Part shown: positions 111 to 60,145 of the stretch, in pieces | How the letters are laid out: every line of letters starts with the position of its first letter | Position numbering within the stretch: position 1 is the stretch's first letter | NCBI RefSeq assembly: GCF_003918875.1 | Contig: NW_025767053.1 | Span: forward strand, 434,001-498,000 | Origin: Haliotis rubra | Taxonomy: Eukaryota | Reading direction: 5' to 3' | DNA: 64,000 bases | Made by a program: the position numbers and the translations under genes | Notes under the pieces: generated by a model | What the model saw: only the letters and a program-made list of their open reading frames with translations | What the model was told of the DNA's origin: nothing | Databases searched by the model: none

Positions 111-477
111 CTGCACAGACAAGTCGTCCCGATTAACATCGTTGTTTACATACTAAACAGTGTACGGACCGTGTAGCTTAACTCAATAGCAATCAGCCGG
201 AATGGTCTCACCATTTTACATCTTTTAAAAATATATTTTAAAAGTCTTTTGGAAAAAGTATATTTAAAAAACAATTGTTCCGAAATATACAGTAAAATTC
301 CGCTGTGTCGAATCTGAAGGGAGGTAAGCTAAACATTCGTGTTACCCGAGGTTTGATACAACCCAAAAAGATGGATAATGAGGAACACTTACTTCGAGAC
401 AACCCTATATTCAACAAGGTCCGACACAACAGTGCTTAACTGTAACGGAAAACTATGTTGTTATGTTTTAATAATTT

Positions 478-2244: not shown

Positions 2245-2248
2245 TTAC

Positions 2249-2406
2249 CTGAACATCTTTGATCCCGTCTATACCGGTCACTACACACTCTAGCTCCACG
2301 GTCTTTCCCACGGCTGCTACTAAACGCGTTCCATTTCCGTTGGGGATGCGAACAGTGGGAACAGCCTGCGCCACCAGCAGGGTCAACGACGACACCACCA
2401 ACAACT
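2249..2406 (-). CDS. Ig-domain gene A, coding exon 2: end of signal peptide plus first half of Ig (ELLVVSSLTLLVAQAVPTVRIPNGNGTRLVAAVGKTVELECVVTGIDGIKDVQ)
   Basis: Acceptor gtgtttcag|, donor CAG|gtaatg. 158 nt, phase 1 to 0. Hydrophobic stretch followed by the Ig motif GKTVELEC. Confidence 0.85.
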
Positions 2407-2459
2407 CTGAAACACGGAACATGCAACAATGAATGTGTATCCTCGTACAACACTTAATG

Positions 2460-42710: not shown

Positions 42711-43228
42711 ATCCACAAGTAATGTGAGGTGGTGATCATGGATGACACCACTGGGAAATGGTCCCCATTTGTTTCTTAGCAAGAGTGGCACAGCCGATGA
42801 CTATGTAACTTCATACAGAAACTGATATTTTGCATGTGTATTGGAGTGACAACAGTTCGAACCCAGCTTCACATGAATTTTACAAATGTCACAATTTAAA
42901 TTCGAGTTCGAGACAAGACGGTTGCCGATGTATGAATCGTTGTTGTTTTTTTTGTCTCGAACGTTGGACAGTGCACGATTACGTTATATATACTGGCTCC
43001 ATACTGCATGTTTTTACAACCTATCAAGCGTACCAGCGATCGTTTCATTATGCCCATGCGAAGCTTATATCACGTGATCTTTACTCTCAGGCCCTTCAAC
43101 TACTTGCTTGTTAAAGCACCAAGTGGTGGGTGAATAGGAACTTGTGAGGTCACGTGTTACTTTAGGTCTTCCAGTTTTAGGATATTGCTCTATGGTGTCC
43201 TTTATCACAAAGTTCGAATCTCTTTCAG

Positions 43229-43383
43229 TGTGTCTGTTCAGCGTTGTCAGCGTTGGTTCAGCAGGATTCCCCTCGGACGCCAGCGTGACCATCGCCCCGT
43301 ATGGCTCAGTACAGACACCGACTGCTGGACAGGACTTCGTGCTCAAGTGTTTTATAGACCACGGTCTTTTCGAGTATGTTGAG
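43229..43383 (+). CDS. RTK exon 2: signal peptide end plus Ig1 N-part (VCLFSVVSVGSAGFPSDASVTIAPYGSVQTPTAGQDFVLKCFIDHGLFEYVE)
   Basis: Acceptor tctctttcag|, donor GAG|gtgaga. Ig B-strand motif GQDFVLKC. Confidence 0.85.
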
Positions 43384-43399
43384 GTGAGACGGACACCTG

Positions 43400-45085
43400 T
43401 TAAGGTGAAATGTATACTTGCTGAGGTGAAACGTGTACTTGCGGAGGTGAAATATATGCTTGCTGAGGTGAAACGTGTACTCCCTGAGGTGAAATGTATG
43501 CTAGCTGAGGTGAAATGTATGCTTGCTGAGGTGAAATGTGTACTTGCTGAGGTGAAACGTGTACTTGCTGAGGTGAAACGTGTACTTGCTGAGGTGAAAT
43601 GTATGCTTGCTGAGGTGAACTGTATGCTTGCTGAGGTGAAACGTGTACTCCCTGAGGGGAAATGTACACTTGCTGAGGTGAAACGTGTACTTGCCGAGGT
43701 GAAATGCATACTTGCTGAGGCGAATTGTATACTTCCTGGGGTGAAATGTATGCTAGCTGAGGTGACATGTATGCTTGCTGAGGTGAAACGTGTACTTCCT
43801 GAGGTGAAATGTATGCTTGCTGAGGTGAAATGTATACTTGCTGAAGTGAAACGTGCACTTGCGGAGGTGAAATGTATACTTGCTGAGGTGAAATGTATAC
43901 ATCCTGAGGTGAAATGTATGCTTGCTGAGGTGAAATGTATACTTGCTGAGGTGAAATGTATACTTGCTGAGGTGAACCGTGTACTTGCTGAGGTGAAATG
44001 TATACTTGCTAAGGTGAAGTGTATGCTTGCTGAGGTGAAACGTGTACTTGCTGATGTGAAACGTATACTTGTTGAGGTGAAACGTGCACTTGCCGAGGTG
44101 AAATGTATACTTGCTGAGGTGAAATGTATACATCCTGAGGTGAAATGTATACTTGCTGAGGTGAAACGTGTACTTCCTGAGGTGAAATGTATACTTGCTG
44201 AGGTGAACCGTGTACTTGCTGAGGTGAAATGTATAGTTGCTGAGGTGAAATGTATACTTGCTGAGGTGAAATGTATACTTGCTGAGGTGAAACGTGTACT
44301 TGCCGAGGTGAAATGTATACTTGCTGAGGTGAAATGTATACTTGCTGAAGTGAAATGTGTACTTGCTGAAGAGAAACGTATACTTGCTGAGGTGACACGT
44401 GTACTTGCTGAGGTGAAATGTATGCTTGCTGAGGTGAAACGTATTCTTGCTGAAGTGAAACGTGTACTTGCTGAGGTTAAATGTGTACTTGCTGAGGTGA
44501 AATGTGTACTTGCTGAAGAGAAACGTATACTTGCTGAGGTGACAAGTGTACTTGCTGAGGTGAAATGTATGCTTGCTGAGGTGAAACGTATTCTTGCTGA
44601 AGTGAAACGTGTACTTGCTGAGGTTAAATGTGTACTTGCTGAGGTGAAATGTATGCTTGCTGAGGTGAAATGTATGCTTGCTGAGGTGAAATGTATACTT
44701 GCTGAGTCGAAACGTTTACTTTTTGAAGTGAACCGTGTACTTGCTGAGGTGAAAAGTGTACTTGCTGAGGTGCAATGTATACTTGTTGAGGTGAAATGTA
44801 TACTTGCTGAGGTGAACCGTATACTTGCTGAGGTGAAACGTATACTTCCTGAAGTGAACCGTGTACTTGCTGAGGTGAAAAGTGTACTTGCTGAGGTACA
44901 ATGTATACTTGTTGAGGTGAAATGTATACTTGCTGAGGTGAAATGTGTACTTGCTGAAGTGAAATGTATACTTGCTGAGGTGAAATGAATGCGTGCTTAA
45001 GTGAAACGTATACTTGCTGAGGTGAAACGTATTCTTGATGAGGTGAACCGTGTACTTGCTGAAGTGAAATGTATGCTTGCTTAGG
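43400..45085 (+). repeat. Minisatellite, 21-bp unit x ~80 (GAGGTGAAATGTATACTTGCT), starting just after the exon-2 donor
   Basis: Direct inspection. In frame with exon 2 up to the TGA at 44986..44988. Confidence 0.95.
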
Positions 45086-45524
45086 TATAGCTTCTACCTG
45101 CAACTGGCTTATTAAACGACATAATCTTCAATCCATATCCGTCAAGTCGGACAAAAACATGTCTGCACTGCCAATACGTGTCGAATCATGGTCACACAAT
45201 ATCTACACTATGCATGTTTGTTATTGATTAAGCAATAATTAAGTTACAACACTTAGGCTAGTAAATAATTGATTCTGGATCATCATGGGTGAATGATATT
45301 GTTTTACGCCGTTTTAGCACTGCTCTCGTAATATCACGACAGGCGATATCATTAGGACCTTTACGCATTGTGTCCATGTTGGGAATCGAACCCGGAAGCG
45401 AATACTTTGTCCACTAGGCTACCGAGCAGCCCCGGATCGCCATGTGGGCGAGTGTACAAACAGGTCATACGATAAGAAAAGTTCCCCAGCCATGATCGTG
45501 TGTGACATGCGTGTGTAATTCTAG

Positions 45525-45671
45525 GTATTCTGGATGAGGAAATCGGAACGGGGCAGGGGGAATCTGGAGCCCATATTCCCGCCTGGGACAGGCTCAGACA
45601 GCACAACTCAGATCACTCCCGGTGTCACCAAATACAGCAAGCGGTCAGGCTCTAGTTCCCCAGGAAAACAG
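45525..45671 (+). CDS. RTK exon 3: Ig1 middle (VFWMRKSERGRGNLEPIFPPGTGSDSTTQITPGVTKYSKRSGSSSPGKQ)
   Basis: Acceptor ttctag|, donor CAG|gtgaca. 147 nt, phase 0/0, carries the Ig Trp. Confidence 0.75.
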
Positions 45672-46055
45672 GTGACATATGCTCCACTTTCATAGACTTA
45701 CTCTGAATATAACGCAGACAGTGGCGGCATGTCAATCATGTCAATTTTTTTAAAAAGGGGGTAGGAGGTCGAACCCCCTGAATGCCCCCTTGGTTCCGCC
45801 AATGCAAACTATTAACTTCAATGTGGACTCATCCCCTTGGATCTGTCAATGTCAGTTGTCATTTAAAGCAAAACATACAAGGGTTTAAAATAACGTCACA
45901 TTCGTTCAGTAATGTGACTTCATATGTTGTTAAATTCTAATGTTCATTTCTTAATATTTATAAAGATAATCATGATTATACAATTTCAACGGAATGGCTG
46001 CAAATTTCGAGATGGCACTATAATCTTGTATTATAGATAAAATTCTTTTTTGTCA

Positions 46056-46096
<41 letters not shown>

Positions 46097-46364
46097 GCGT
46101 GTGTGTGTGTATTTGACAAAAAGGAATTTGTCAATACCAGTACTTAAATGAGATGAGAAATTAATCAAAACCACCACTACCAGTAAACTACATATACTGC
46201 TAAAAAAAAGTAAGGCCCATCAAGGCCGTGTGTTGCAGGATCCATCAGACAAAACAGAGTAACTATAGTCACATGGAAAACACCGGGTGTTCTTGAACAT
46301 CATTCGTGTAGTACCTAGGTAGATTAGATACAGTCAACTAATTGATGATTCTTTTCGGTTTTAG

Positions 46365-46476
46365 TACTCTTTCCTCACGATACATTCTCTGACCTACAAA
46401 GATGATGGTGACTACGTTTGCGGTTTCTTCAGAGGCAAATACAACTTGAGCGGCATCTACGAGATGAACGTGGAAG
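46365..46476 (+). CDS. RTK exon 4: Ig1 C-part (YSFLTIHSLTYKDDGDYVCGFFRGKYNLSGIYEMNVE)
   Basis: Acceptor ttttag|, donor G|gtgggt. Contains LxI and DxGxYxC Ig motifs. Confidence 0.9.
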
Positions 46477-46732
46477 GTGGGTTAAATCATGTTGTCCGGA
46501 CACTACTCCGTGTGTGTCCCCTTCCCATCACGTCCGACCTCACCCACACCCCACAATTATAGTCAGAGAGGGTGAATAACGCCTCAGATGGCCAGTCTCG
46601 ACTATACACCGAAGCAGATCATATTGGACCTCGAGGAATAAGTGGTGGAGATTATTTTTAAATATCACTGAAAAAACAGTTATAAAGTAGGATGTGCGCT
46701 GTTTTGAACAGTACTTCGCACATATAACGCAA

Positions 46733-46898
46733 CTGACTGACTGAGTTTGGTTTTACGCCGCTTTTAGCAATATTCCAGCAACATCACGGCCGGGGACACC
46801 AGAAATGGGCTTCACACATTGTACCCATGTGGGGATTCGAACCCAGGTCTTCGGCGTGACGAGCCAACGCTTTAACCATTAGGCTACCCCACCGCCAC
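46733..46898 (-). mobile_element. SINE family 1 in RTK intron 4
   Basis: Near identical to the copy at 23113..23280. Confidence 0.9.
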
Positions 46899-47285
46899 CT
46901 TATATTAGACAAGTGATCCCAAAGACAGGCAGTACTTAGCTGTTTCAATGTAACCTCATTGGGGAAACACACCAGCGTTGTGGTGACACTTATAGATATA
47001 CCATGTGGGTCCGCATTCTCAAAACGGTCTCAGCTCTAAGAAGTCTTAACTTTGATCGTAGCCAGTGTGTTAAGAATGGGCTTTAGAAGTTTGTAGAGCT
47101 ACGAACGTTTCGAGAATAGCTAGCCTAATTCCCACCAAGGACCTGGGTTTCTAGTACGCCTTAAGGACTCAAATCCCGGGGGTACGAGTGAGTGAATCAA
47201 CATTGCTGATGGCCGCATCAGCAATTGTGCTTCTACTCTCGGTGATCTGGACTACAAGACTGAAGTTGTGTGCTGGCTGTTCCAG

Positions 47286-47436
47286 GTGGGCCAAATATAT
47301 CTTCAATGGTCACGGAGAAAAATGGCATTGTGGGATACCATGAACTGATCAAAGTGGAGTACATCGCCCGACCCCCCCTCGACAGCGTCACGTGGTATGG
47401 TCCATCGGGAGACGTACTCGACACCAACACATCCAG
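47286..47436 (+). CDS. RTK exon 5: Ig2 N-part, no Cys (GGPNISSMVTEKNGIVGYHELIKVEYIARPPLDSVTWYGPSGDVLDTNTSR)
   Basis: Acceptor gttccag|, donor AG|gtcagg. Phase 1 to 2. Confidence 0.85.
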
Positions 47437-48005
47437 GTCAGGTACCGACACTGTCGAAACTTCATGTGATGTTGAATAATCTGTCAACCATTCTGTCATA
47501 CACTTTCTGTACATTCTTTTTGGAGAAGTTTCTGTAGAACATTCGCTGTTAAAAAAGCTCTGTGAAACAATTGTTTGTCAAAATATTTCTGTCCAACATT
47601 CTCTTCTTTCCATTTATACCAATATTCTTTGTTGAATATTCTCTGACAAACACTTTCTGTCCAATATTCCTTATCCGTCATTCTCTGTCAAGCATACTAT
47701 CAAGCATTTTTATCTACATTTCTCTTCTGAACATTCTGTATCTGCAACAGAATGTTTAACATGCCCCGTCAAATGTCTCTGACAAGAATTCACGATCAAA
47801 CAATATCTCTCAAACAATCTGACAAGCACAAAAATACTGATGCAAACAATTTCCTGTCAAACATTGAGTGTCAATATAAAGCATTCTTTGTCAAACACTT
47901 TCTATGGAGATTTAAAAGGCTGATAATCAGTGCAAATGTGGGTCCAGCAGATCCTGGCGCAGACACCCCCAGTTCTATTCCTCATGTATGGTTTGTCTGT
48001 CTAAG

Positions 48006-48151
48006 GGTGTACATCAAGGAGTCGCAGCAGAGTGATGCGAGGGGGTTGGTAATCCTACACATCACCAACTTCTCTCGTGACGACAAGGGGGTGTACAGCG
48101 TCGTTCTCAGCAACGACGTGGGAGATGACAATGTGGAGTTCGAGTTCCATG
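48006..48151 (+). CDS. RTK exon 6: Ig2 C-part (VYIKESQQSDARGLVILHITNFSRDDKGVYSVVLSNDVGDDNVEFEFH)
   Basis: Acceptor tgtctaag|, donor G|gtaagc. DxGxY motif with Val in place of Cys. Confidence 0.85.
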
Positions 48152-48559
48152 GTAAGCTGACAGGCTGAGCTACCGTCTCCGTGGTCTTGTGGCTATCCCG
48201 GATAAGACGTCAGGATCAGTGACAATCTGAACCAGTTCTGACCCCTAAGTCCTTTCATAAATCATAATGGGAAATAACGTCATCGGGTGGGTGATTGATG
48301 GAAATTGTGATGCGATTTTGTTGATACAACACGACGAAAGAACGTACACAGAAGGGAATATCATGTGCAATAAAGTGAGTGAGTATGGTTTTACTAGATT
48401 CCAGCAATATTACGGCGGGAGACACCAAAATTAGGCTTCACACATTGTACTACTGTGGGGAATCGGAACCGGGAAGAAAATACATGTACAATATTTCCAA
48501 TGCGTCAGTATTGATACATACTATCATAATGTAGAATGTGGACGTGGTGTGTGTTGCAG

Positions 48560-48663
48560 CGGACCCCTTCCTGGAGGTCGTAACCCCCAACTCCACCACG
48601 TTCCCCCACGGCTCCACTGCAGTGTTCATCTGTAGGGCCACCAACTTCAGGAGCCAGCCCATG
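48560..48663 (+). CDS. RTK exon 7: Ig3 N-part (ADPFLEVVTPNSTTFPHGSTAVFICRATNFRSQPM)
   Basis: Acceptor gttgcag|, donor ATG|gtaagt. Confidence 0.85.
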
Positions 48664-48690
48664 GTAAGTACATGACAATATGGACCGATA

Positions 48691-49948
48691 CAGTATTCCC
48701 AGAAATTATTGAGAAAGTTGTTTCGGCAAATTTCTACTACATGTATATATACTAAAGACGTTTTACCTAAATGAATATGTTGAGATACGATTCTCTTACA
48801 TTCTAAATGTCTTTCCAGTACTTTGTGAGACCTTCTTGCCCTGCAATACACGACTGAATGCGCCTAGGTGCACTACCGATCAAAGTTTGGAGGACATTGT
48901 GGGACAGTGTATATCCCATTATTCGACCACTTCTTTTATCCTATTCTCAATATTTCTAAGTCCTTTTTGGTTTATTCTGTCCTTCATTAGTCCCCACACA
49001 TTCTCAATAGGGTTCAGATCTGTGTTGTAGCTGGGCCAGCCTAAAACTTGAACATTTTCGTCCGACAACCAGTGTTTTGTGTAGCCCGTATTATCTTTAT
49101 ACAGTGTTCGGACCGTTGGAAGGAGGTGACCATTTAGGATGCCAACATATCGTTCCTTTGTCAAATTTCCAGTGAAAATGTACAACGGCGTCACTCCATG
49201 TGATGGTATCTCACCCCACATGTGAAATTTCGGGCTATGTTTTGGGCGTTGGTAGATAGGTGAAACCGTTTCACGGTATCTTTTGTCCAAATGTTCATAG
49301 TTCCGAAAAACACAGACAGAACTTTCATCAGAAATGTAAATTATCCCAATCTTGATTTTGGTGAGCCCTGCACCAGTTTAAACGTCTTTCTTATTGTGCA
49401 TGTTTCATCAATGGTGAGGGAATTCAGCGCTTTGTCACCCAGTTAAGACTTTGTAATTCTTGTCTCAGGTTTTCATTACATACCAGAGGACTTCCTCTAT
49501 TAATCATATCATTTCTGATATCCGCAACGCTTTTCAATTTTCTCCTACTCACAATCTGACCAAGTTGCCGGTGATCCGTAGAACTGAACGTCCTTGGCCT
49601 CCCTGCCCCTGTCATGTGCCCAGTCCCAAATCCTGACTGAATAATCTTCAAAATTCTGTATACTGTAGACAGAGGAAGGTCATGTCTACCAGATATCTCT
49701 TTTTCATTAGTCACATACCCTTTCAAAAAACACCCAGAATTAGCTTTCTTTTTTCTTCTGCTGTCCATTCTGCCATGTTAACAAAGGAAGCCGTCTGCTA
49801 CACCAGGGGAGATAACTCTTCATGTAGTAAGGTTCATTCTTAATTATCCTACAAGGGTTGCCTACCATATTGAGTACCTTACTACATAACGTAACACCTA
49901 CTTTATCTTTGGAAACGAAGATTTTCTCAATACTTTTTGGGAAAACTG
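48691..49948 (-). mobile_element. Tc1 transposon (degenerate) filling most of RTK intron 7, antisense
   Basis: TIRs CAGTATTCCCAGAAATTATTGAGAAA and TTTCTCAATACTTTTTGGGAAAACTG; transposase motif WPSYNTDLNPIENVWG. Confidence 0.9.
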
Positions 49949-50273
49949 AAACTATAGTCAATGATTGCCTGCCACCAACTTCTGGAGCCAGCCTGTTGTA
50001 AGGATAACACGGACCAATAACGGCAGCCAATAATTGTCTGTGCGGGCTTTCTCCGACTTCAGTACTTATGAAGTGATATGCCCGCTGTTTTGGCTTTGGG
50101 GACTTAGTTAATACATACAATCGCATAATGCGTGGATTCTTGCTTATGATGTAAAACACACGAGTGTCTGGTTCAGATCCATTATAACAGTCCGCCGTCA
50201 TAACGTAAACATCGCTAACTGCGGCGTTAAACAAACAAACAAACAAACATTAATGTTGCGTATGTTCCATTAG

Positions 50274-50493
50274 TTCATGTGGCACCATGGTTGGGCGAAG
50301 AAAGATTTGCTGGAAATGCCTGCTACCAGAAGCGTAACCTTGGCAACAGAGAAAAGCATGACCAGCAATGTGACCACGTGGATGTCGACGGTGACGATCC
50401 GAGGCGTCAACTACAAATTTATTGGCGTCATTGAGTGTGCAGCGTCCGAACTCGGGGAGGTGTACGCCGATAGCAACACCATCAACGTTATTG
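50274..50493 (+). CDS. RTK exon 8: Ig3 C-part (FMWHHGWAKK...STVTIRGVNYKFIGVIECAASELGEVYADSNTINVI)
   Basis: Acceptor ccattag|, donor G|gtacgt. Contains the Trp and second Cys of the Ig fold. Confidence 0.85.
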
Positions 50494-51004
50494 GTACGTG
50501 TCTATAGAGCCTTTGCATTCAGGTCCAACAATACTGCGACATTATTCAGTATTCATGCCTGTGGACTAGAGTAGGGTGAAATCAGGGTTAGGGATTGGGA
50601 GTTTGGTTGTCTCGGTCCTTACTATGCTAAAATGCATTGTTTATATTCATTCACTTGGATCCATAATTCACTTTTGTAAGTTTAAAAAAGGCGTTGTTCG
50701 TCATATTAATCACTGGTTACCTTGCTCGTTCTTTCATAATTTACAGACCACCTACACAAAGCTTGTCATATAGATAATAAACATATTGTTGACAAGATCT
50801 TGTTTAATATCATCTCACTCACTGACTCACCAAAAATCCATCAACCCATCGCCTAGACCATACGGGTTTATCCACAAGCCACTCTTACGCAGCTGGAATA
50901 TTACTAATTGAGGTGTTTAGCGACAACAAAAATGAAGAAAAGAACTACATTATGAGTATTTGACGTAATCAAGATCGCACAAGATCTGGATTTATTGTTC
51001 TATA

Positions 51005-51407
51005 TACTATTCACACTTTGCTGAGGGTCAAATCATGGATTCAACAGAAAACTATGATGTGGGGGTCAAATTTGGTTTAAATTATATCTAAGCTTATTTT
51101 AAGCATGGATCCTAGGTTTCAGTTTGTCATTGTTTCTTGTGGATCCCATACCTGCTATTGACAGGTGCTGTGTGCTTGTGAATGAATTGTTCCATGATTT
51201 GCAAAATGGTTGATTGGTGCCATGAAAACCATTTTTATGGTTACTCATGTATCAAGTGCATAATGTTAGATTAAAGTGGCTGTTTGCCTAAAGAGGGGTT
51301 ACCATATTATTATTTATCCAGTTTTAAATGGATACAATTTCAAATTATAAATCTGCGTTTAAGTAGTGTTGTGAATCATTGTGATCCTTAGCAGAGTGTG
51401 AGTAGTA
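51005..51407. mobile_element. Tc1/mariner-type MITE (~400 bp, TA TSD) ending 24 nt before exon 9
   Basis: TIRs TACTATTCACACTTTGCTGAGGGTCA and TGATCCTTAGCAGAGTGTGAGTAGTA. Second copy at 62129..62520. Confidence 0.8.
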
Positions 51408-51431
51408 TATATCGCCATGTCTGTGTTCTAG

Positions 51432-51582
51432 GGTCGCCGATGATCCAGTCCAGCATGAGGTCTGTGCTGGCGCAGTTGGGGGAGACGGTGGAGTTGCAGT
51501 GTAACGTGTCGTCCAACCCGCCCCCCACACAACTGCAGTGGCTGTTCAACAGGAACACGGTCAAGTTCCAGAAGTTTGCCGC
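51432..51582 (+). CDS. RTK exon 9: Ig4 N-part (GSPMIQSSMRSVLAQLGETVELQCNVSSNPPPTQLQWLFNRNTVKFQKFA)
   Basis: Acceptor gttctag|, donor GC|gtgggt. I-set pattern G-x-T-V-x-L-x-C...NPPP...W. Confidence 0.9.
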
Positions 51583-52057
51583 GTGGGTATCCTCATTTAT
51601 ATATAGAACTTTCTCCGTTTCATGAAGTCAATCATAAAATTAAAATTATTAAAAAATAAATAATTCAAGTCATTTTGGAGAGATTGAGAGATTTCACTGA
51701 CCTTTGGTTTTTGTTCGGCTTTTATATTGTATGCCTGAACTGGAAGATTGACCAGATTTTTCAGGAAGAGTTATCTTTCCTTGCCAAAACTAAACTCCAC
51801 GTTTCAACACGGGTAAAATGTGTTTTCCGTATAATTAATTCTAAATACGATAATACACGTAGCACGTTGCCGTTTTGAATAAAATATGTATTTTTCCTTG
51901 ATACGTCGCTCATTATCAAAGAAACTTAAGGCAAATTGATTTCCCATCAGATGCATGGCAGTTAAAAACAGTTACTTTCATTATGTACAAGAAGATGGAC
52001 TATTAGGTGATGATGGCACAAGTGAAATATATACTCAGTATGATGCCTATTTTACAG

Positions 52058-52191
52058 CAATTGGACATCGCGAGACGTCACTATGGAAATGAAACATGTG
52101 GTGGAAGTGACAACAACAGAAGACTTTGGAATCTACATGTGTCAGGTGACCAACATGTACGGCACCAATGGCTACAGTATCCACCTCATCG
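52058..52191 (+). CDS. RTK exon 10: Ig4 C-part (NWTSRDVTMEMKHVVEVTTTEDFGIYMCQVTNMYGTNGYSIHLI)
   Basis: Acceptor ttttacag|, donor G|gtaaga. Motif DFGIYMC...N..G. Confidence 0.9.
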
Positions 52192-52199
52192 GTAAGAAC

Positions 52200-53600
52200 A
52201 TCTGCTACCTTCATGTAGTTCACAGCGGTGAGATTACCTAGCCCCTGACTGTAATCCATGCATACACAGGGGATCACCATTATGTACTTGTAGTTCATGC
52301 ATACGTGGGTGTGAATATCTAGTACCTTCCTGTAGTTCATGCATGTATAGATAAGAACACCTCGTACCTTCCTGCAGTTCATGCATACGTGGGTGTGAAT
52401 ATCTAGTACCTTCCTGCAGTTCATGTATGTATAGATAAGAACACCTCGTACCTTCCGGCACTTCATGCATACGTGGGAGTGAATATCTAGTACCTTCCTG
52501 CAGTTCATGTATGTATAGATAAGAACACCTCGTACCTTCCTGCAGTTCATGCATACGTGGGTGTGAATATCTAGTACCTTCCTGTAGTTCATGCATACAT
52601 CGGGGAGCACACAGTACTTTTCTGTAGTTCATGCATACATCGGGGAGCACACAGTACTTTTCTGTAGTTCATGCATACATCGGGGAGCACACAGTACCTT
52701 CCTGCACTTCATGGATACATCGGGGAGCACGCAGTACCTTCCTGCACTTCATGCATACATTGGTGAGAACATTTAGTGCCTTCCTGCAGTTCATGCATAC
52801 ATAGATAAGCACACCTGGGACCTACCTGTAGTTCATGCATACATTGGAGGAGCACATTGCACAATATCTAGTACCTTCCTGCAGTTCATGTATGTATAGA
52901 TAAGAACGCCTCGTACCTTCCTGCAGTTCATGCATTCGCGGGTGTGAATATCTAGTACCTTCCTGTAGTTCACAGCGGTGGGAGTGCCTAGCCCCTGTCT
53001 GTAGTTCATGTATACATCGGGGAGCACGCAGTACCTTCCTGTAGTTCATGCATACATCGGGGAGCACGCAGTACCTTCCTGTAGTTCATGGATACATCGG
53101 GGAGCACACAGTACCTTCCTGCACTTCATGGATACATCGGGGAGCACACAGTACCTTCCTGCACTTCATGGATACATCGGGGAGCACGCAGTACCTTCCT
53201 GTAGTTCATGCATACATCGGGGAGCACACAGTACTTTTCTGTAGTTCATGCATACATCGGGGAGCACACAGTACCTTCCTGCACTTCATGGATACATCGG
53301 GGAGCACGCAGTACCTTCCTGCACTTCATGCATACATTGGTGAGAACATTTAGTACCTTCCAGCAGTTCATGCATACATAGATAAGCACACCTGGGACCT
53401 ACCTGTAGTTCATGCATACATTGGAGGAGCACATTGCACATCGATGTAGTTTACTCATACATCCGCGAGAGCACTAAGTACCTTCCTCTAATGCATGCAT
53501 ACATTAGAGGAGAACATTGCACATCCATATAGTTTACTCATACATCGGCGAGAGCCTTAAGTACCTTCCTCTAATGCATGCATACATCAGTGGGAACATA
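52200..53600 (+). repeat. Compound ~40-bp tandem array filling RTK intron 10
   Basis: AGTACCTTCCTGTAGTTCATGCATACATCGGGGAGCACAC and alternating variants. Confidence 0.9.
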
Positions 53601-53660
53601 TAGCACCTTCCAGTGGGAACATATAGCTCTCAACCCTTGTGTGTATTACCGATGTTGCAG

Positions 53661-53780
53661 GGGCCATGTACAACTGGTGCAGGGGCAGATTGTGCCCCAA
53701 GGACAAGCTCTGTGACGAGGAAAACATCGTCTGCGTGTGTCCACAGGGATATGCCGAGAACAAGGAGGGCGTCTGTAAAG
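53661..53780 (+). CDS. RTK exon 11: EGF-like domain (GAMYNWCRGRLCPKDKLCDEENIVCVCPQGYAENKEGVCK)
   Basis: Phase 1-1 exon with six Cys and the CxC-PxGY-x6-C pattern. Confidence 0.9.
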
Positions 53781-54436
53781 GTGACTCCAGTATTAGGGCC
53801 AACACATACGTTGGTGTTATAGAGCGCCCAGAGCGGTGAACGTGAGGTCGGGCTCAGCTGTCTATTGGCCACAGTGCCCTGACGTGTCCGGACATTGGAA
53901 CAGAGCTGTCTGGATATAGCTGTTAGATTGCTGACTGCGGTTTAAAATAAGATTGACTCACACAGCCGGTATGTGTCAATCGACCATGGTTTGTCCAGAC
54001 GAAGGTGTAGAGCTGTCCTAATATAGCTATGACGCAAGTTACCGACTGCGTTAAACACCACTGACCCACCCACCGGTGTGTGTCCCGAACAGTCGATGTG
54101 GACGATGACGTAAAATGGTTAGCTTTAGGTCTGCGTTCTCTTCTCCACTTCGAGCCCCTGCCTCTGTGTGGTAGGCATGTTAAAAGTTGGGTAAATATCT
54201 TCTCATTCACTGTTGGCGAACTGGCCCAATCAGAGTCTGGGTTTTGTGCAGCCGCCAGACCGAAGCCTAAAGGACAATGGTGGTACGTCCTTCTATGGTA
54301 ACGTCACAATATGAGCGTATCAAGACATAACATCGTGCTACTAAAATGATTTCATGTCCAAAAGATTAACCACCTCATTAGTTGTAGTTAAGGACAACTG
54401 AACAATGTGTATAGAATTCTGTACTTTGTATTCCAG

Positions 54437-54564
54437 ACTCTGCGCCACCGACACAGGCAGTGGAGACGTACGTGTGGGCGGCCGTGGGCGCCAGCAGCTT
54501 GCTCGTGGTCATCTTGGCCATAGGCAGCATCCTGTATATGTGCTGGAAGAGACGGAACAACCTG
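54437..54564 (+). CDS. RTK exon 12: transmembrane helix (DSAPPTQAVETYVWAAVGASSLLVVILAIGSILYMCWKRRNNL)
   Basis: Acceptor ttccag|, donor CTG|gtcagt. About 23 hydrophobic residues followed by a KRR stop-transfer. Confidence 0.9.
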
Positions 54565-54651
54565 GTCAGTACCCGGCATTTGTAATTCCCTCACGACCTT
54601 TCAGGTAAAATGAGCATTAACGACCTGTTCAGTATGTTAGCGCATATATAG

Positions 54652-54883
54652 TGGTTGGTTGGTTTGTTGTTAAACGCCACACTCAGCAATGTTACATCTA
54701 TATGGCGGCGGTCTGTAAATAATCGAGTCTGGACCTGACAATCCAGTGATCAACAGCAAGAGCATCGATCTACGCAATTGGGACACGATGACATATGCCA
54801 ACCAAGTCAGTGAGCCCGACCCCGTTAGTCGTCTCTTACAAGCCTTGGTTACCGAAGACCAATTGTAACCCGGACCTTCACAG
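54652..54883 (-). mobile_element. SINE-like family 2 in RTK intron 12
   Basis: Matches the family consensus. Confidence 0.85.
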
Positions 54884-55288
54884 GCATGTAAATAGTGACG
54901 TGCATGCAGGCGCGTGCGGCTGCTCGTGCAACCAAAGGACGCATGTCTGTTTGCCGACTATCTGTAGCAAACAAAGATACAATGCCGCAGTTAGACATGG
55001 ACACCAAGCACAGACACATTACCCTAAGCAGACCAATTCTTGTTTTACACATCCCCACGAGATTTAGCATCCACAAACAAAGACAAAGCAATGTATACGC
55101 CTGGCCCAATTATTAACATGCTTTGTACTGACACCATTTGGCTTGTCACGGTATAGCTTGTGTGGTTCAAACAGTTCCAGAATGTTGGATATTAGAAATC
55201 GGGAATCCCCCCCCCCCCTTTTCTATAACGTCTGTCACAATTTTCATTACACAAACGTGAACATAACATCATTTCTTTTTGTTTCCAG

Positions 55289-55354
55289 CTCAAACAGAAA
55301 CAAGTCAGGTCGGACAGATTCGCACTTACCAACGCAGTATACTCCCACGCTCAG
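55289..55354 (+). CDS. RTK exon 13: juxtamembrane (LKQKQVRSDRFALTNAVYSHAQ)
   Basis: Strong polypyrimidine acceptor, donor CAG|gtaggc. 66 nt, phase 0/0. Confidence 0.75.
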
Positions 55355-55746
55355 GTAGGCACAACCAGTTTTTGACCGAGTTCCTGTCTACTTTAACGAG
55401 GAGACAAGAAGTGGCCGCGATTGGACAACCTAATAAGAAGCATACATTAGTCTTCGGTATCGAATGAAATCATAAATATTTGGGACTCAATGAAATGTAA
55501 ACTAAATATCTTCACTAATGAACACATTATAAGTTTATTGCACAAAACGTTCGGATGTCTGGTGTGGACGTCTTCATGTGTATTTGGATTAATTATGAAT
55601 GACGATACGCATGTGCACTTGTGGCCGGCTGGACGGGCGTGGTAGACGCCTGCAGCACATTTTACAACGAGTCTTACATGGAATCAGCCATCGTGTTATT
55701 TCTTATATTCTGACGTTATAATACATACTGTCAACTTCCTCCCTAG

Positions 55747-55924
55747 TATGCCACTTCTAACATCTATGAGATTATCACGAGACCCAGTGACGAGTTCCCG
55801 CGGGAACGCCTGAGATTTCTCCACGCACTTGGAGTCGGCAAGTTTGGCCGGGTAATGAAGGCGGAAGCTCTTAGCATCAACCGCACAGGATCCTGGGAAG
55901 ATGTAGCAGTCAAAATGTGTCAAG
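55747..55924 (+). CDS. RTK exon 14: kinase subdomains I-II (YATSNIYEII...EFPRERLRFLHALGVGKFGRVMKAEA...VAVKMCQ)
   Basis: GxGxFG and VAVK motifs, canonical splice sites. Confidence 0.95.
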
Positions 55925-56903
55925 GTCAGTTTAAAAAAAAATGCATCAAAGATGATACGTGTCTATGTGAACATTCGCCAGTAAACATCGCAAATTGTAA
56001 ATTCTCAGTACGAGCGAGCGAAGCATTAACAGTAGCCTTTTTATGTCCCTATCAAGGAAACTAATACTGTTCTCCAAATGGAAAGTAAAACCAACAATGT
56101 CATATATGGTTTTGATATCCCATACACGCTGTCAGTACAGCCACAAGTTGTTAGATCTTGTTTATCTGTAATGGCTTTATTTTGTTAATATTTAAATGTT
56201 AGGATGAGGTGAAAAATATATAAAAACTCCCTCTGCATGAACGCAAAAACCCGTCCATCTTCCATTCAGTTTTAGGCGTGTTTGTCACGTAGTGACAAGA
56301 TATTTCGCCATTTCGTCACGGGGAGGTGATTAATACCTGCGTCTAAACATCTGAGTTGTATGGATCGTTGTACCTACGAAACAGATTTCTGTTCACAATG
56401 AAGCCTGATATTGTTTGGATATATTTTTCGTACGTAGCTTTATCTCTGTCATGAATGTATGAGCCTTGGTTAGGAATTAGTAGTAGTAAGAGGACTCAAA
56501 GGATGCTATAAGAATGCCAGGTATATTGCGCCTATCTGTACGTTAATATATCAAAATATATAACATTATCAGTTTTCCTTCCCTCCAACGTTCTGTACTA
56601 CACGAAAATAGACACATCTGATTGCATTAATGACAATAGTAAAACACTGACAGGAACCAGTCTTTGTGTCAAGACGTGAAAAATGTATATTTTCTCTTCG
56701 GGCTAAATGTGTGTTTCGAAGCCTCTTGGAAATATGTTTTTATTTTTTATTGTTTGAATTTTGGTTGAAATAATATTTACGTGTTACAATATACCGAAGA
56801 TAGGGAATAACGTCGGAAGTCGATACGTTTCTGTACTGGAGTTTCTTTATCTAACTACCGAACCACGTACTGGCATTGACTCGTTTGTCCTCGCTGTTCC
56901 CAG

Positions 56904-57014
56904 AGTCTGCCACAGATCTGGACAAAGAGGATCTGTACAATGAGCTGATGATCATCAGGAAAATCCCCAAACACATCAACGTCGTCAGCTTCTACGGCGC
57001 CTGCACATACGGAG
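56904..57014 (+). CDS. RTK exon 15: alphaC helix and subdomain IV (ESATDLDKEDLYNELMIIRKIPKHINVVSFYGACTYG)
   Basis: Conserved Glu and HxNVV...GACT, canonical splice sites. Confidence 0.95.
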
Positions 57015-57687
57015 GTAGGTCGTCCTTGTGTGGTGTTCGTGTGACGTTTGTGAATGCGAGACAGTGAATGTCATCAATGAGGTGGGTGGCCTAGGTCAGA
57101 CATCACAGTGGCTGATAGTATGAATAACGATCTTCGAAAGCAGCAACACCAGCTGCCACATGAGATACACCGTGTAATATTCTAGTCGCCACTGCCGATA
57201 CGTCTACGATACATTCGACCACATGGGTCTGATGCGGCCGTTGACCCACTCCGACCTTCTGCTCACTTGGAAGACGCTCTATCCACTGCATGATCCTTCA
57301 CAGTGTCACGACAGTTCTTTTGTCCAAGAGTCTCCTCGTGGTAATACACCAAGGCACCTTACAACCCCATATTAGGAAATGTGCAGTAGCCAGTTAAACA
57401 TGCATCCCTGCTTTTCAGAGAGACCAAGAAGCATTTGTTTTGTCTGATAGCAATTCGATATTTACATACTTGACAGTTCCGGGATATAAAGATGACTCCT
57501 GTCTTTGAACGAAAGAGTTATCTTTCAATGATCTGTATCAGGGTAGTTGCTCATTAGTTTGAGGCAGATTTCTCAATGGTGGACTTCTGATAAGGTACAA
57601 CATTGGTCTGAAGGTGTGTTTGTTTATCGTTCTGCAGTTAGCAATATTCCATCCATATGACAGCTGTGATCGAACCTGGAGTAAACA

Positions 57688-57836
57688 GGGGCGGTGGGGT
57701 AGCCTAGTGGTTAAGGCACTCGCTCGTCACGCCTAAGACCCCGGGTTCGAATCCCCACATGGGTACATTGTGTGAAGCCCATTTCTGGTGTCCCCCGCCG
57801 TGATATTGCTGGAATATTGCTAAAAGCGGCGTAAAA
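57688..57836 (+). mobile_element. SINE family 1, intact, with 12-bp TSD CTGGAGTAAACA, inserted in a decayed family 2 copy
   Basis: A and B boxes present. TSD at 57676..57687 and 57837..57848. Confidence 0.9.
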
Positions 57837-57950
57837 CTGGAGTAAACAATCAATAATTGACGTTTTAAGCATGGATCTAGGCAATTATCTTTGTGTGTGC
57901 ATACAGTGGGCTAATGGCTATGTACACGTGTAAAACGTCTTGCGTTACAG

Positions 57951-58178
57951 AGCCTCTCCTTCTCATCTTGGAGTATGTCCCTGGCGGGGATCTGCGCAAC
58001 TACCTGCGCAGACGCCGACCTGCCTACGACAAGACATGGGAGAGTCCAGTCAGTGTACATGAGAGCCCCCCTAGCTTTGGAGGAAGTGTCCAAAGATGAT
58101 GGAGAGCTGACGGCCAAAGATCTACTGTCCTTTGCTTTACAGACAGCCAGAGGAATGCAGCACCTTGAAGCCAACAGC
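57951..58178 (+). CDS. RTK exon 16: hinge, short kinase insert and alphaE; contains a +1 frameshift
   Basis: EPLLLILEYVPGGDLRNYLRRRR is in one frame and LTAKDLLSFALQTARGMQHLEANS in another. The exon is 228 nt where 227 is needed. There is a C6 run at 58066..58071. Confidence 0.9.
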
Positions 58179-58396
58179 GTATGTGTCAGAGTGTATATGA
58201 AATACAGAAATATGTTTAATCAGAGAATATACATAATCAGAGAATCTGCATAACTATTACCCAATATATTAACCGCTGGTTCGGGAAGACTTAACGGAAT
58301 TGATTTCTTTGGCTGACTGCGGCGTAAAACACCCCCTACACCATAGTTTGACGACAGTGTTACTGATTTTTTGCTTGTTATGCATCGTGGTTACAG

Positions 58397-58631
58397 ATCG
58401 TACATCGTGACGTCGCTGCCAGGAACGTCTTGGTCGGATACAACTGTGTGTGCAAGATCTCGGACTTTGGTCTCGCGAGAGATGTAGAGGGCGTGGACGT
58501 GTACGAGAGGACGTCCAAGGGGCCGCTCCCAGTCAGGTGGATGCCCCCTGAAGCTTTGATGGAGGGGTTCCACAGTCACAAAGCGGACGTGTGGTCCTTC
58601 GGGGTCTTACTGTGGGAGATCGTTACACTAG
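58397..58631 (+). CDS. RTK exon 17: catalytic loop, activation loop and P+1 loop
   Basis: [13 protein letters not shown]...[10 protein letters not shown]...[18 protein letters not shown]...[16 protein letters not shown]. Confidence 0.97.
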
Positions 58632-58784
58632 GTAGTCAAATATTTCATTCATAATTCCTTGATTGCATAGTGCTCGATATTACATATTGATCATTTTAGA
58701 AATTTGAGTTCGGTGTTTGATAATAGGTGATCCACACAAAGAACTGTTCTTCGTTAATGTCATAACGTGTACCTTTTAATCCAC

Positions 58785-59025
58785 AGGTGAAAATCCGGGT
58801 TAGCATTGCTTTTCGGCAACCCATGATGCTTGTCTTAAGAGGCGACTAACGGGATCGGGTCGTCAGGCTCGCTGACTTTGTTGACACGTCATGGCATCCC
58901 AGGTGCTTAGATGGATGTAAATGCTGTCGTTCACCGGATTGTCTGGTCCAGATTCGATTATTAACACACCGTCGCAATACAGCTGAAATATTGCTGAGTG
59001 CGGTGTTAAATAAAGACAAACAAAC
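58785..59025 (+). mobile_element. SINE-like family 2 in RTK intron 17
   Basis: Matches the family consensus. Confidence 0.85.
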
Positions 59026-59047
59026 TAATGTTTTAATCCAACATCCC

Positions 59048-59187
59048 NNNNNNNNNNNNNNNNNNNNNNNNNNNNNNNNNNNNNNNNNNNNNNNNNNNNN
59101 NNNNNNNNNNNNNNNNNNNNNNNNNNNNNNNNNNNNNNNNNNNNNNNNNNNNNNNNNNNNNNNNNNNNNNNNNNNNNNNNNNNNNNN
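59048..59187. other. Assembly gap (140 N)
   Basis: Run of N in intron 17. The protein is continuous across it. Confidence 1.
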
Positions 59188-59217
59188 CCAGTCACTCACT
59201 GATGTATCTCTGTGTAG

Positions 59218-59314
59218 GAGCCAGTCCCTACTCCACGATGACACTGCGAGGGGTCATTGACGCCGTTGTTGCTGGGAAACGTCTGGAGCGACCTCAGTAC
59301 TGCATGGACGAACT
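59218..59314 (+). CDS. RTK exon 18 (GASPYSTMTLRGVIDAVVAGKRLERPQYCMDEL)
   Basis: Acceptor tgtgtag|, donor CT|gtaagt. Tyr-kinase pattern GxxPY...GxRLxxP..C. Confidence 0.92.
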
Positions 59315-59967
59315 GTAAGTGTGAAGCCAATTCCGGTGTTTGCTATCAGTTGGATTCTGTAGGAATATACACAAATCACGTCAGTATAGAAGGGATCTTA
59401 TCGGGATTCTGATCCAGTACCCAGTACCCCCAGTACCCCCAAATTTCTACAAACCTACAGAAAAAGGGGATATATTTGTCTGATTACATATCATGGCGTA
59501 CATGTTCACCTGCAAGTAGGATGAATGCGAGGACATGACATGAGAATTCCGCGGCAGAATTTGTTTGTCTTGTTCCGGAGTATACAGGACTACCGTGGGG
59601 TAGGTGTACAAATAAAATATCTCTCACTCACTGCCCACTACCATGTAGCCTACCCACCATGGTAGATGAGAACTTAAATATAGCATAGCAAGATGCGATC
59701 TGCTTGGGGAACTTCGTTGCAAATGAAGAACAAGTTAATTTGTTTACCGTTAAAACAATGGGATTCACTTTGAAAATACCGCCTCGGGCTCAAGATAATT
59801 TGAAATGTGAACGAATGTGGAATTGTGCTCATAGTGTGTGGCCCAGTTTGCGCATATAGTGCCCATCAATACCCATCACCCTTGAGACGTGAATAGACTG
59901 AGCCAGTCATCAATATTCATCGGTGGCGGCAGGAATTTACACTGATTTCACAATTTATGTTGCCCAG

Positions 59968-60145
59968 GTACTCGCTGATGAGCAAGTGTTGGGAACATCA
60001 GCCTCAAGACCGGCCCTGCTTCAAAGAGCTCGTGCAGCACGTGGAGTACCTGCTTGAGAAGGAGGCGGACTACATACAGCTCGACCAGTTCCAAGAGGCA
60101 GTGTACATGGTGTTGGAGCCCGATTCCCAGGACGAGAAGCTATAA
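59968..60145 (+). CDS. RTK exon 19, terminal (YSLMSKCWEHQPQDRPCFKEL...EADYIQLDQFQEAVYMVLEPDSQDEKL*)
   Basis: CW...RP.F subdomain XI motif followed by a TAA stop. Confidence 0.95.

What the first reader, a model, noticed from the sequence alone, without database searches (positions are those of the whole stretch)
60062..60145. ITAM-like tandem tyrosine motif and PDZ-type terminus in the RTK tail
Seen: E-A-D-YIQL-DQFQEAV-YMVL, which is D/E-x2-YxxL-x7-YxxL, followed by a C-terminal EKL. Established: YxxL/I-x6-8-YxxL/I is the ITAM spacing bound by tandem-SH2 kinases (Syk/ZAP70; Shark binds Draper in flies). Inference: an Ig-domain RTK carrying its own ITAM-like dock could couple directly to a Syk/Shark pathway in invertebrate immunity, phagocytosis or wound healing.
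Basis: partly seen in the sequence, partly recalled or inferred. Interest (0 to 1): 0.7.

Follow-up and report, generated by a model that had tools for sequence, protein, structure and literature searches.

The report
Conserved two-tyrosine tail of abalone kinase
The ITAM-like pair of tyrosines and the EKL end are real and strongly conserved, but they are the standard tail of an old receptor kinase family (Cad96Ca/Stitcher type, in register with the human Tie2 tail), so a link to Syk/Shark is possible but unproven.

Summary
Window 60062-60145 (+) encodes EAD-YIQL-DQFQEAV-YMVL-EPDSQD-EKL-stop, in the last exon (59968-60145) of an Ig/EGF receptor tyrosine kinase of Haliotis rubra.

It is not chance. 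Among 41 short-tailed relatives found with the kinase core alone, the first Tyr is kept in 39 and the second in 40. None has an indel between them, 33 fit the strict ITAM consensus, and 39 end in E-[KR]-[LV].

The gene is labelled "FGFR3-like" but groups with arthropod Cad96Ca/Stitcher and echinoderm relatives, outside the FGFR, RET and Tie clades.

The same register (Tyr at 0 and 11, aromatic at 6) occurs in arthropod RET and two cnidarian kinases. It also occurs in Tie2 ([15 protein letters not shown]) and Tie1, which has Phe at position 6. A profile of the tail picks Tie2 as the best single-kinase match among solved structures.

AlphaFold2 predicts the tail ordered through both tyrosines, with a floppy end.

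Best reading: a Tie2-like regulatory and phosphotyrosine-docking tail. A true ITAM that binds Syk/Shark is not excluded and remains testable.

Caveat: the window has an extra C (58066-58071) that shifts the frame upstream of the tail. I could not tell an assembly error from a real break.

An earlier scan note on this window (s1-325311) already called the kinase Cad96Ca-like.

The parts
60071..60082 (+). First YxxL (YIQL; Y0). It aligns with Tie2 YVNT, FGFR EYLDL and EGFR RYLVI.
   Evidence: Y is kept in 96% of 48 family sequences.
60083..60103 (+). Seven-residue spacer DQFQEAV, with a conserved aromatic at +6 and an acidic residue at +8.
   Evidence: No indel in any of the 41 + 25 sequences examined.
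60104..60115 (+). Second YxxL (YMVL; Y11). It aligns with Tie2 YAGI.
   Evidence: Y is kept in 98% of 48 sequences.
60134..60145 (+). C-terminal E-K-L plus the TAA stop. The family consensus is [DE]-E-[KR]-[LV]-COOH.
   Evidence: 39 of 41 end in E[KR][LV]. E at -2 is 92% conserved. pLDDT is low at the end.
59968..60145 (+). Last coding exon: end of the kinase domain (subdomain XI, helix alpha-I) plus the 24-residue stretch from Y0 to the end.
   Evidence: The splice joint is seen.
59218..59314 (+). Penultimate exon (kinase C-lobe, ASPYS...CMDEL).
58397..58631 (+). Exon with the catalytic loop (HRDVAARN), DFG and the activation loop.
57951..58178 (+). Exon with the hinge and kinase insert. It is 228 nt where the exon phases require 227.
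58066..58071 (+). C6 run with one C too many relative to the orthologues. Read as it stands, it leads to TGA at 58097-58099, where the public H. rubra model P0191 ends.
55747..57014 (+). Juxtamembrane and N-lobe exons (55747-55924 and 56904-57014) with the intron between them.
54436..54582 (+). Transmembrane exon.
53654..53779 (+). EGF-like exon.
   Evidence: Pfam EGF hits are in paralogues.
43228..52193 (+). Signal-peptide and Ig-domain exons of the ectodomain, with long repeat-rich introns.
59048..59187 (.). Run of N. It lies in the intron between exons 58397-58631 and 59218-59314 and was not filled or looked up.

Best explanation
The stretch is the family-typical C-terminal tail of a Cad96Ca/Stitcher-group receptor tyrosine kinase. 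Here the kinase carries an Ig/EGF ectodomain and belongs to a mollusc-wide paralogue expansion. The tail is a fixed-length module, about 24 residues from the first Tyr to the C-terminus. It has two near-invariant tyrosines 11 residues apart, an aromatic residue at +6 and an acidic-x-hydrophobic end. The same register occurs in arthropod RET, in two cnidarian kinases and in vertebrate Tie1/Tie2, so it is probably ancestral to the FGFR/RET/Tie/Cad96Ca group. Inferred mechanism, by analogy with Tie2 and with the FGFR (EYLDL) and RET tail tyrosines: in the resting receptor the proximal tail lies on the C-lobe and restrains the kinase. After activation the two tyrosines are phosphorylated and serve as docking sites for SH2 proteins. 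The floppy acidic C-terminus is free to bind a partner such as a PDZ domain. Shown here: the sequence, its conservation, its register with Tie2, the family placement and the predicted order. Inferred: phosphorylation, autoinhibition and the identity of the partners.
For: Conservation without circularity: in 41 short-tailed hits of a search with the kinase core only, Y0 is kept in 39, Y11 in 40, there is no indel, and 39 end in E[KR][LV]. In 25 diverse members Y11 is invariant and Y0 is kept in 24. True FGFRs keep only Y0 (EYLDL), followed by unrelated long tails. Tree on the kinase core with the tail excluded: molluscs (99/97), arthropod Cad96Ca-like (99/98) and echinoderms (99/98) form one group (89/91), apart from the Tie (100/99), RET and FGFR clades. 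A tail profile against PDB gives Tie2 52 bits, E 4e-13, gap-free over 53 positions, while other single-kinase-domain chains (FGFR, KIT, RET, Mer, FAK, VEGFR2) score about 38-42 bits and stop at positions 30-40. Two chains with two kinase-type domains each also score high (9p9u_A 58.8 bits, 7t6f_A 47.9 bits), each summing two matched stretches that stop at positions 30-38. Tie2 and Tie1 tails fetched as proteins confirm the register. AlphaFold2 gives pLDDT 87 and 84 for the blocks holding Y0 and Y11 and 57 for the last ten residues; the second model gives 86, 80, 61 and 54. EGFR chains superpose through the Y0 segment (model 1-176). Only kinases with autoinhibitory C-tails (titin kinase, CaMKII, UNC-89) align over the whole model including the tail (185-187 residues). 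Literature: the Tie2 tail binds SH2/PTB domains and blocks the substrate site (PMC13493436, PMC11903958). Stitcher activates PI3K through an unknown adaptor (PMC3720245).
Against: No phosphorylation, binding or activity data exist for this protein or, in the papers I could search, for the tail of any Cad96Ca-group member. Tie2 did not appear among the 50 listed structural matches, so a Tie2-like path of the tail is not shown. The tree places Tie with RET and FGFR rather than with the Cad96Ca group, so the shared tail is either ancestral or convergent. The matches to titin kinase and CaMKII are distant (17-20% identity, rmsd 2.7-2.9). In this assembly a frameshift upstream would prevent translation of the tail.
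Confidence: 0.6

Rival explanations
1. True receptor-intrinsic ITAM. Both tyrosines are phosphorylated, by the receptor itself or by a Src kinase, and the doubly phosphorylated motif binds the tandem SH2 domains of Syk (Shark in flies). This would couple the receptor to a Syk pathway in wound or immune responses.
For: The strict D/E-x2-YxxL/I-x7-YxxL/I pattern is kept in 33 of 41 relatives, with invariant spacing. An acidic residue lies within the three positions before Y0 in 40 of 41. Molluscs have a Syk with two SH2 domains that co-precipitates with an ITAM-bearing Ig receptor (PMC6994640). Shark binds the Draper ITAM directly (PMC6219719). The Drosophila relative Stitcher acts in wound healing.
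Against: The +3 residues drift outside molluscs and insects (F, V, T, M, E) while the tyrosines stay. Spacer and flanks are conserved, which an ITAM does not need. The segment is predicted ordered on the kinase. In Tie2 the tail that holds the tyrosines of the same register is described as binding SH2 and PTB domains, with no Syk link in the papers read, and the Tie2 first motif YVNT is not YxxL/I. No paper in the library links Cad96Ca or Stitcher with ITAM or Shark.
Confidence: 0.12
2. Trafficking signals. The two YxxΦ motifs act unphosphorylated as tyrosine-based sorting signals for clathrin adaptors, and the acidic-x-hydrophobic C-terminus acts as a PDZ ligand. Together they would set the receptor's membrane domain and its endocytosis.
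For: Both motifs fit YxxΦ in 41 of 41 relatives when L, I, V, M and F are allowed. The last ten residues are conserved at E(-2) (92%) yet predicted flexible, as short linear motifs are.
Against: Sorting signals do not require a fixed 11-residue distance or conserved spacer residues. Y0 is predicted packed against the C-lobe, as in EGFR. This was not tested directly.
Confidence: 0.1
3. In this genome the tail is not made. The extra C at 58066-58071 is real, the protein ends in the kinase insert (as in the public 699-residue H. rubra model), and the downstream exons are relics of a recently broken gene or allele.
For: The window as it stands reads into TGA at 58097-58099. Exon 57951-58178 is 228 nt where the phases need 227. 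P0191, the public model, stops there. No intact H. rubra protein is in the 90% cluster of the orthologue.
Against: It is a single-base difference in a homopolymer, a common kind of assembly error. All downstream exons are open, correctly spliced and 90-95% identical to H. rufescens, better than the ectodomain exons. A contig of a close relative (run X6, RNA only guessed) joins the last three exons.
Confidence: 0.25

Closest known systems
Tie2/TEK (and Tie1) C-terminal tail, human Y1102 / Y1108 / Y1113
   Same: The register after helix alpha-I is the same, with no gap: Tyr at 0, aromatic at +6, Tyr at +11, hydrophobic at +14, an acidic end, and nearly the same length to the C-terminus (22-23 against 24 residues). 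The Tie2 tail is ordered in crystals, blocks the substrate site and binds SH2/PTB proteins.
   Different: The kinase does not fall in the Tie clade and the ectodomain has no FN3 domains. The Tie first motif is YVNT or YVNM, not YxxL/I, so Tie does not match the ITAM pattern. The Tie end is AEEA(A), not E-[KR]-[LV].
Drosophila Cad96Ca / Stitcher and arthropod Cad96Ca-like kinases
   Same: It is the nearest kinase clade. The tail module is the same (DYIELxxFPxHxYYN[ILV]...EKL or ELL) with identical spacing. Stitcher is an orphan-type receptor whose adaptor to PI3K is unknown.
   Different: Drosophila Cad96Ca is named for a cadherin repeat (the name, and my own knowledge). Here the ectodomain is Ig x4-5 plus EGF. 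The arthropod second motif is YYN[ILV], which also fits a Grb2-type YxN site; the abalone YMVL does not.
FGFR EYLDL tyrosine (FGFR1 Y766, FGFR2 Y769) and RET DYLDL (Y1015): PLC-gamma docking sites
   Same: Y0 aligns with this tyrosine directly after helix alpha-I. YIQL fits the hydrophobic +1/+3 pattern. That these sites bind PLC-gamma is from my own knowledge. PDB entries 3gqi, 5eg3 and 8jqi, which are FGFR-PLC-gamma complexes by their titles, appear.
   Different: FGFRs lack the second Tyr at +11 (theirs is at +10) and continue with long unrelated tails. The gene is outside the FGFR clade despite its public name 'FGFR3-like'.
Canonical ITAM (Ig-alpha/beta, FcR-gamma; Draper in flies; CgIgR in oyster)
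   Same: It fits the consensus D/E-x2-YxxL/I-x6-8-YxxL/I. It sits in the cytoplasmic part of an Ig-domain surface receptor. Syk-type kinases exist in molluscs.
   Different: It sits at the end of a catalytic receptor, is predicted ordered on the kinase, and has conserved spacer and flanks. No binding data exist. The Draper tyrosines are 15 residues apart (Y934/Y949) and those of CgIgR 12.
EGFR proximal tail segment (RYLVI)
   Same: It aligns in sequence and in structure (model residues up to 176 against EGFR 809-984) with the DYIQL segment. This suggests that the hydrophobic +1/+3 residues pack on the C-lobe.
   Different: It is a different family, with no second Tyr in register and a long tail.

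Membership tests
Cad96Ca/Stitcher-group receptor tyrosine kinases | The kinase domain groups with Cad96Ca rather than with FGFR, RET or Tie. | tested here: met
   tail excluded from the alignment: mollusc clade (99/97), arthropod Cad96Ca-like (99/98) and echinoderms (99/98) form one group (89/91). The quick tree agrees.
Cad96Ca/Stitcher-group receptor tyrosine kinases | Short C-terminal tail DYIxL-x7-Yxx[LIV]...E-x-[LV]-COOH. | tested here: met
   A fly Cad96Ca-like protein (Rhagoletis, P0121) and a crayfish one (Cherax, P0075) carry it.
Cad96Ca/Stitcher-group receptor tyrosine kinases | Cadherin repeat in the ectodomain (the feature that gave Cad96Ca its name). | tested here: not met
   Pfam on the orthologue P0001 and on paralogues finds Ig and EGF-type domains only. 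The gene is therefore filed as a member of the kinase clade with a different ectodomain.
FGF receptors | The kinase lies within the FGFR clade and has the FGFR-type tail (EYLDL followed by a long Ser/Pro-rich tail). | tested here: not met
   The FGFR clade (100/99) excludes it. The tails differ. FGFRs are merely the most similar solved kinases (about 270 bits, Z 38-40).
Tie receptors | The kinase lies within the Tie clade, with an Ig-EGF-FN3 ectodomain. | tested here: not met
   The Tie clade (100/99; vertebrates, amphioxus, a starfish) excludes it. No FN3 domain was found.
Tie receptors | C-tail register Y0 / aromatic +6 / Y+11 / hydrophobic +14. | tested here: met
   (profile against PDB: Tie2 is the best single-kinase-domain match, gap-free over 53 positions).
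ITAM | Sequence consensus D/E-x2-YxxL/I-x6-8-YxxL/I. | tested here: met
   It is kept in 33 of 41 relatives.
ITAM | Lies in a flexible cytoplasmic tail of a non-catalytic signalling chain, with only the two YxxL/I conserved. | tested here: not met
   It is part of a kinase. pLDDT is 80-87 through both tyrosines. Spacer positions +1, +6, +8 and the terminus are conserved.
ITAM | The doubly phosphorylated form binds the tandem SH2 domains of Syk/ZAP-70/Shark. | not testable with these tools
   This needs peptide binding or pull-down experiments. No report was found.
PDZ ligand, class III ([DE]-x-hydrophobic-COOH) | C-terminal pattern, conserved and accessible. | tested here: met
   EKL in the window. 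E[KR][LV] in 39 of 41 relatives. E(-2) is 92% conserved. The terminus has low pLDDT.
PDZ ligand, class III ([DE]-x-hydrophobic-COOH) | Binds a PDZ domain. | not testable with these tools
   No partner is known. Pattern only.

The most novel reading that the evidence does not exclude
The whole Cad96Ca group (molluscs, arthropods, echinoderms) carries a receptor-intrinsic ITAM of pre-bilaterian origin, of which the Tie1/Tie2 tail is a degenerate remnant. Once phosphorylated by the receptor's own kinase, it recruits Syk/Shark through both SH2 domains. That would supply the missing link between Stitcher-type receptors and their wound-healing and immune outputs.
Probability: 0.12. Interest if true: 0.7.

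Novelty: new member of a known kind. Interest (0 to 1): 0.4.

Why it matters
Cad96Ca/Stitcher-type receptors act in wound healing and growth in flies, but how they couple to PI3K, Src and ERK is not known; the adaptor is called unknown in PMC3720245. This work gives a precise, conserved and testable candidate: two tyrosines 11 residues apart and an acidic-x-hydrophobic end, present from molluscs to echinoderms and in register with the Tie2 tail. It also corrects the public label "FGFR3-like" for a mollusc-wide family of Ig/EGF receptors. It shows that the ITAM pattern here is inherited family anatomy, not an immune innovation of abalone. If the bidentate binding idea held for Syk/Shark or another tandem-SH2 protein, it would tie a receptor kinase directly to a pathway so far known from non-catalytic immunoreceptors.

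Tried and rejected
1. Searching PDB with the 37-residue tail alone gave only a chance hit to a designed ankyrin protein. The profile of the whole last exon was needed.

2. A word-based homologue search on residues 800-893 of the orthologue found only 7 proteins. It was too insensitive for the tail.

3. Three structure comparisons and the wide search did not list Tie2 among the 50 rows shown. I therefore could not test whether the predicted tail follows the Tie2 path. Model coordinates are not readable here, so burial of the tyrosines could not be measured.

4. The coral protein P0162 has a Tie-like tail but turned out nearest to RET and FGFR by sequence. It branches basally, so it does not support a specific Tie link.

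5. The idea that the frame change at 58066-58071 is a very short intron (22 nt, GT..AG) was rejected. That is far too short for an animal intron, and the orthologues translate through it.

6. FGFR membership was rejected.

7. Oyster CgIgR (five Ig domains plus an ITAM, binds Syk) was considered as a possible family member. As described, it has a cytoplasmic tail, no kinase domain is mentioned, and the spacing differs, so I treated it only as evidence that the Syk axis exists in molluscs.

8. Kontos 1998 and Master 2001, on Tie2 Y1101 and Dok-R, are not held in the library. Only their titles, as cited in PMC11245153, were used.

Full report
**What is there**

Window 60062-60145 on the + strand translates to EADYIQLDQFQEAVYMVLEPDSQDEKL followed by TAA. 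The other strand has stops. The pattern is exactly D/E-x2-YxxL-x7-YxxL and the protein ends in E-K-L.

The stretch closes the last coding exon, 59968-60145. That exon starts with kinase subdomain XI (YSLMSKCW...RPCF) and helix alpha-I. The exon before it is 59218-59314.

The joint 59314 to 59968 (GT..AG) is present in a contig of run X6, from a closely related organism. The kind of that run is only guessed to be RNA. The contig's loose end upstream reads the end of exon 58397-58631. The run of N at 59048-59187 is intronic. I did not fill it or look it up.

**The gene**

tblastn with the orthologue P0001 (Haliotis rufescens, 893 residues, named "FGFR3-like") gives 18 collinear blocks from 43231 to 60142. 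The domain order is signal peptide, Ig domains, an EGF-like module, a transmembrane segment, a tyrosine kinase (Pfam PK_Tyr, 573-859) and a short tail.

The window is Haliotis rubra: its public model P0191 is 100% identical over most exons. Tails of four Haliotis species differ at only two positions, both after the second motif.

**A caveat found on the way**

Exon 57951-58178 is 228 nt where the exon phases require 227. Relative to three orthologues the frame slips inside a C6 run at 58066-58071. As it stands the sequence reads into TGA at 58097-58099, which is where P0191 ends (699 residues).

All later exons are open, correctly spliced and 90-95% identical to H. rufescens. A one-base homopolymer error is therefore the more likely cause, at about 3 to 1. 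I could not test this.

**Is it more than chance?**

The strict pattern occurs in 0.19% of shuffles of the exon peptide. It occurs twice in 280,041 non-tail residues of all fetched proteins.

A phmmer search of the last exon against 1.84 billion representatives returned about a hundred proteins whose C-termini align to the tail. That ranking favours similar tails, so I repeated the test with the kinase core only (P0001 573-835). Of the 41 hits with short tails:
- 39 keep the first Tyr and 40 keep the second;
- none has an indel between the two tyrosines;
- 33 fit the strict ITAM consensus;
- 39 end in E-[KR]-[LV];
- 30 have exactly 24 residues from Y0 to the end.

In 48 family sequences Y0 is 96% conserved, Y11 98% and E at -2 92%. 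Isoleucine at +1, leucine at +3, an aromatic at +6 and an acidic residue at +8 are also favoured.

**Which family?**

FGFRs are the most similar solved kinases (about 270 bits; Z 38-40), which explains the public name.

A careful maximum-likelihood tree of the kinase core, with the tail left out and a Src-type kinase as outgroup (50 rows), shows something else. Molluscs (99/97), arthropod Cad96Ca-like proteins (99/98) and an echinoderm clade (99/98) form one group (89/91). This group is separate from a second group (86/84) that holds Tie (100/99), RET (100/98) and FGFR (100/99). Two cnidarian kinases branch below both. A quick tree gave the same picture.

Names from the sources confirm a fly (Rhagoletis) and a crayfish (Cherax) "Cad96Ca-like" protein among the tail-bearers. 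Each mollusc has several paralogues. One of them, P0164, starts on the minus strand of this same window.

**Where else the register occurs**

- True FGFRs keep only Y0 (EYLDL) and then diverge.
- An arthropod RET-like protein (P0157) has SYLELNGAQNRSYYNL.
- Two cnidarian kinases have TYINLDEYDNSLYANM and EYISLRMYDDHLYVNF.
- A profile of the last-exon region from 25 family members, run against all PDB sequences, puts Tie2 first among single-kinase-domain chains: 52 bits, E 4e-13, gap-free over 53 positions. The other receptor kinases reach about 38-42 bits and their alignments stop at positions 30-40. Two chains with two kinase-type domains each (9p9u_A, 7t6f_A) score 58.8 and 47.9 bits, each summing two matched stretches that stop at positions 30-38.
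- Tie2 and Tie1 proteins fetched later read [24 protein letters not shown] and AYVNMALFENFTYAGIDATAEEA.

So the abalone Y0, F6 and Y11 correspond to Tie2 Y1102, Y1108 and Y1113. Given the tree, the simplest reading is that this tail is ancestral to the whole FGFR/RET/Tie/Cad96Ca group. Convergence is not excluded.

**Structure**

AlphaFold2 on kinase plus tail (60-row alignment) gives mean pLDDT 88. The ten-residue blocks holding Y0 and Y11 score 87 and 84, and the last ten residues score 57. A second model of C-lobe plus tail gives 86, 80, 61 and 54. The tail is thus predicted ordered through both tyrosines, with a flexible end.

EGFR chains superpose up to model residue 176, through their RYLVI segment. 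This suggests that the +1 and +3 hydrophobics of the first motif pack on the C-lobe.

In the wide search, only kinases with autoinhibitory C-terminal tails (titin kinase, CaMKII, UNC-89 kinase) align over the whole model including the tail: 185-187 residues, Z about 18-19, rmsd 2.7-2.9. That is suggestive, not decisive. Tie2 was not among the rows listed, so its tail path could not be compared.

**What is known**

- The Tie2 tail (1096/1102-1124) carries tyrosines that bind SH2 and PTB domains. It sits so as to block the substrate site, and deleting it changes how Tie2 phosphorylation responds to oxidant (PMC13493436, PMC11903958).
- The title of Kontos et al. 1998, as cited in PMC11245153, names Tyr1101 as the main p85 site.
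- The Draper ITAM (Y934/Y949) binds the Shark tandem SH2 directly (PMC6219719).
- Oyster Syk has two SH2 domains and co-precipitates with an Ig receptor that carries an ITAM (PMC6994640).
- No paper in the library combines Cad96Ca with ITAM, or Stitcher with Shark.

**Verdict**

The most likely function (0.6) is a Tie2-like tail. It would restrain the kinase at rest and present two phosphotyrosine docking sites after activation, with a free acidic-x-hydrophobic end for a further partner.

The 11-residue spacing would suit any tandem-SH2 protein. Syk/Shark is one candidate (0.12). PLC-gamma, the PI3K regulatory subunit and Shp2 are at least as plausible by homology with FGFR, RET and Tie2.

Sorting signals (0.1) and a broken gene in this genome (0.25, an independent question) remain open.

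Noticed in passing
window 58066-58071 (and the stop at 58097-58099): One extra C in a C6 run shifts the frame of the kinase-insert exon relative to three Haliotis orthologues. The public H. rubra protein model (699 residues) ends at the resulting stop and so lacks the catalytic loop and the tail. This is either an assembly error or a real truncation.
   Followed up: partly
window 2246-2407 and 3-116, minus strand: These are the first exons of a paralogous Ig/EGF receptor kinase (P0164, 982 residues, 98-100% identical here). It runs off the left end of the window, head to head with the gene studied and about 41 kb away. Its tail is DYIQLNQMEEGIYQVLEGVRSEEKL.
   Followed up: partly
window 43381-45085: A long tandem array gives an open heptad-like frame (AEVKCIL...) directly after the signal-peptide exon, in the first long intron.
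   Followed up: no
window 41659-42708: A tandem repeat array is open in several frames on both strands (units such as ASPVTHRARTDLQQPML), upstream of the mapped exons.
   Followed up: no
window 52047-53441: A repeat array in the intron between the last Ig exon and the EGF exon is open in several frames on both strands (units such as HELQEGTRYSHPRM).
   Followed up: no
window 48919-49768, minus strand: Two open frames look like a Tc1/mariner-type transposase (a helix-turn-helix part, then ...WPSYNTDLNPIENVW...). They lie inside an intron of the kinase gene.
   Followed up: no
proteins P0157-P0159 (arthropod RET-like, cadherin domain), P0162 (coral) and P0230 (Nematostella): These kinases lie outside the Cad96Ca group yet carry the same Tyr-x10-Tyr register right after helix alpha-I. 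This suggests that the tail is older than the split of the FGFR, RET, Tie and Cad96Ca families.
   Followed up: partly
window 60017 (and 60001): DNA and guessed-RNA contigs of a related organism differ at 60017 (T to C, Cys to Arg in RPCF). DNA contigs of one run also differ at 60001 (G to A, synonymous). No difference was listed inside the motif itself, but 40 differences were not shown by the tool.
   Followed up: no
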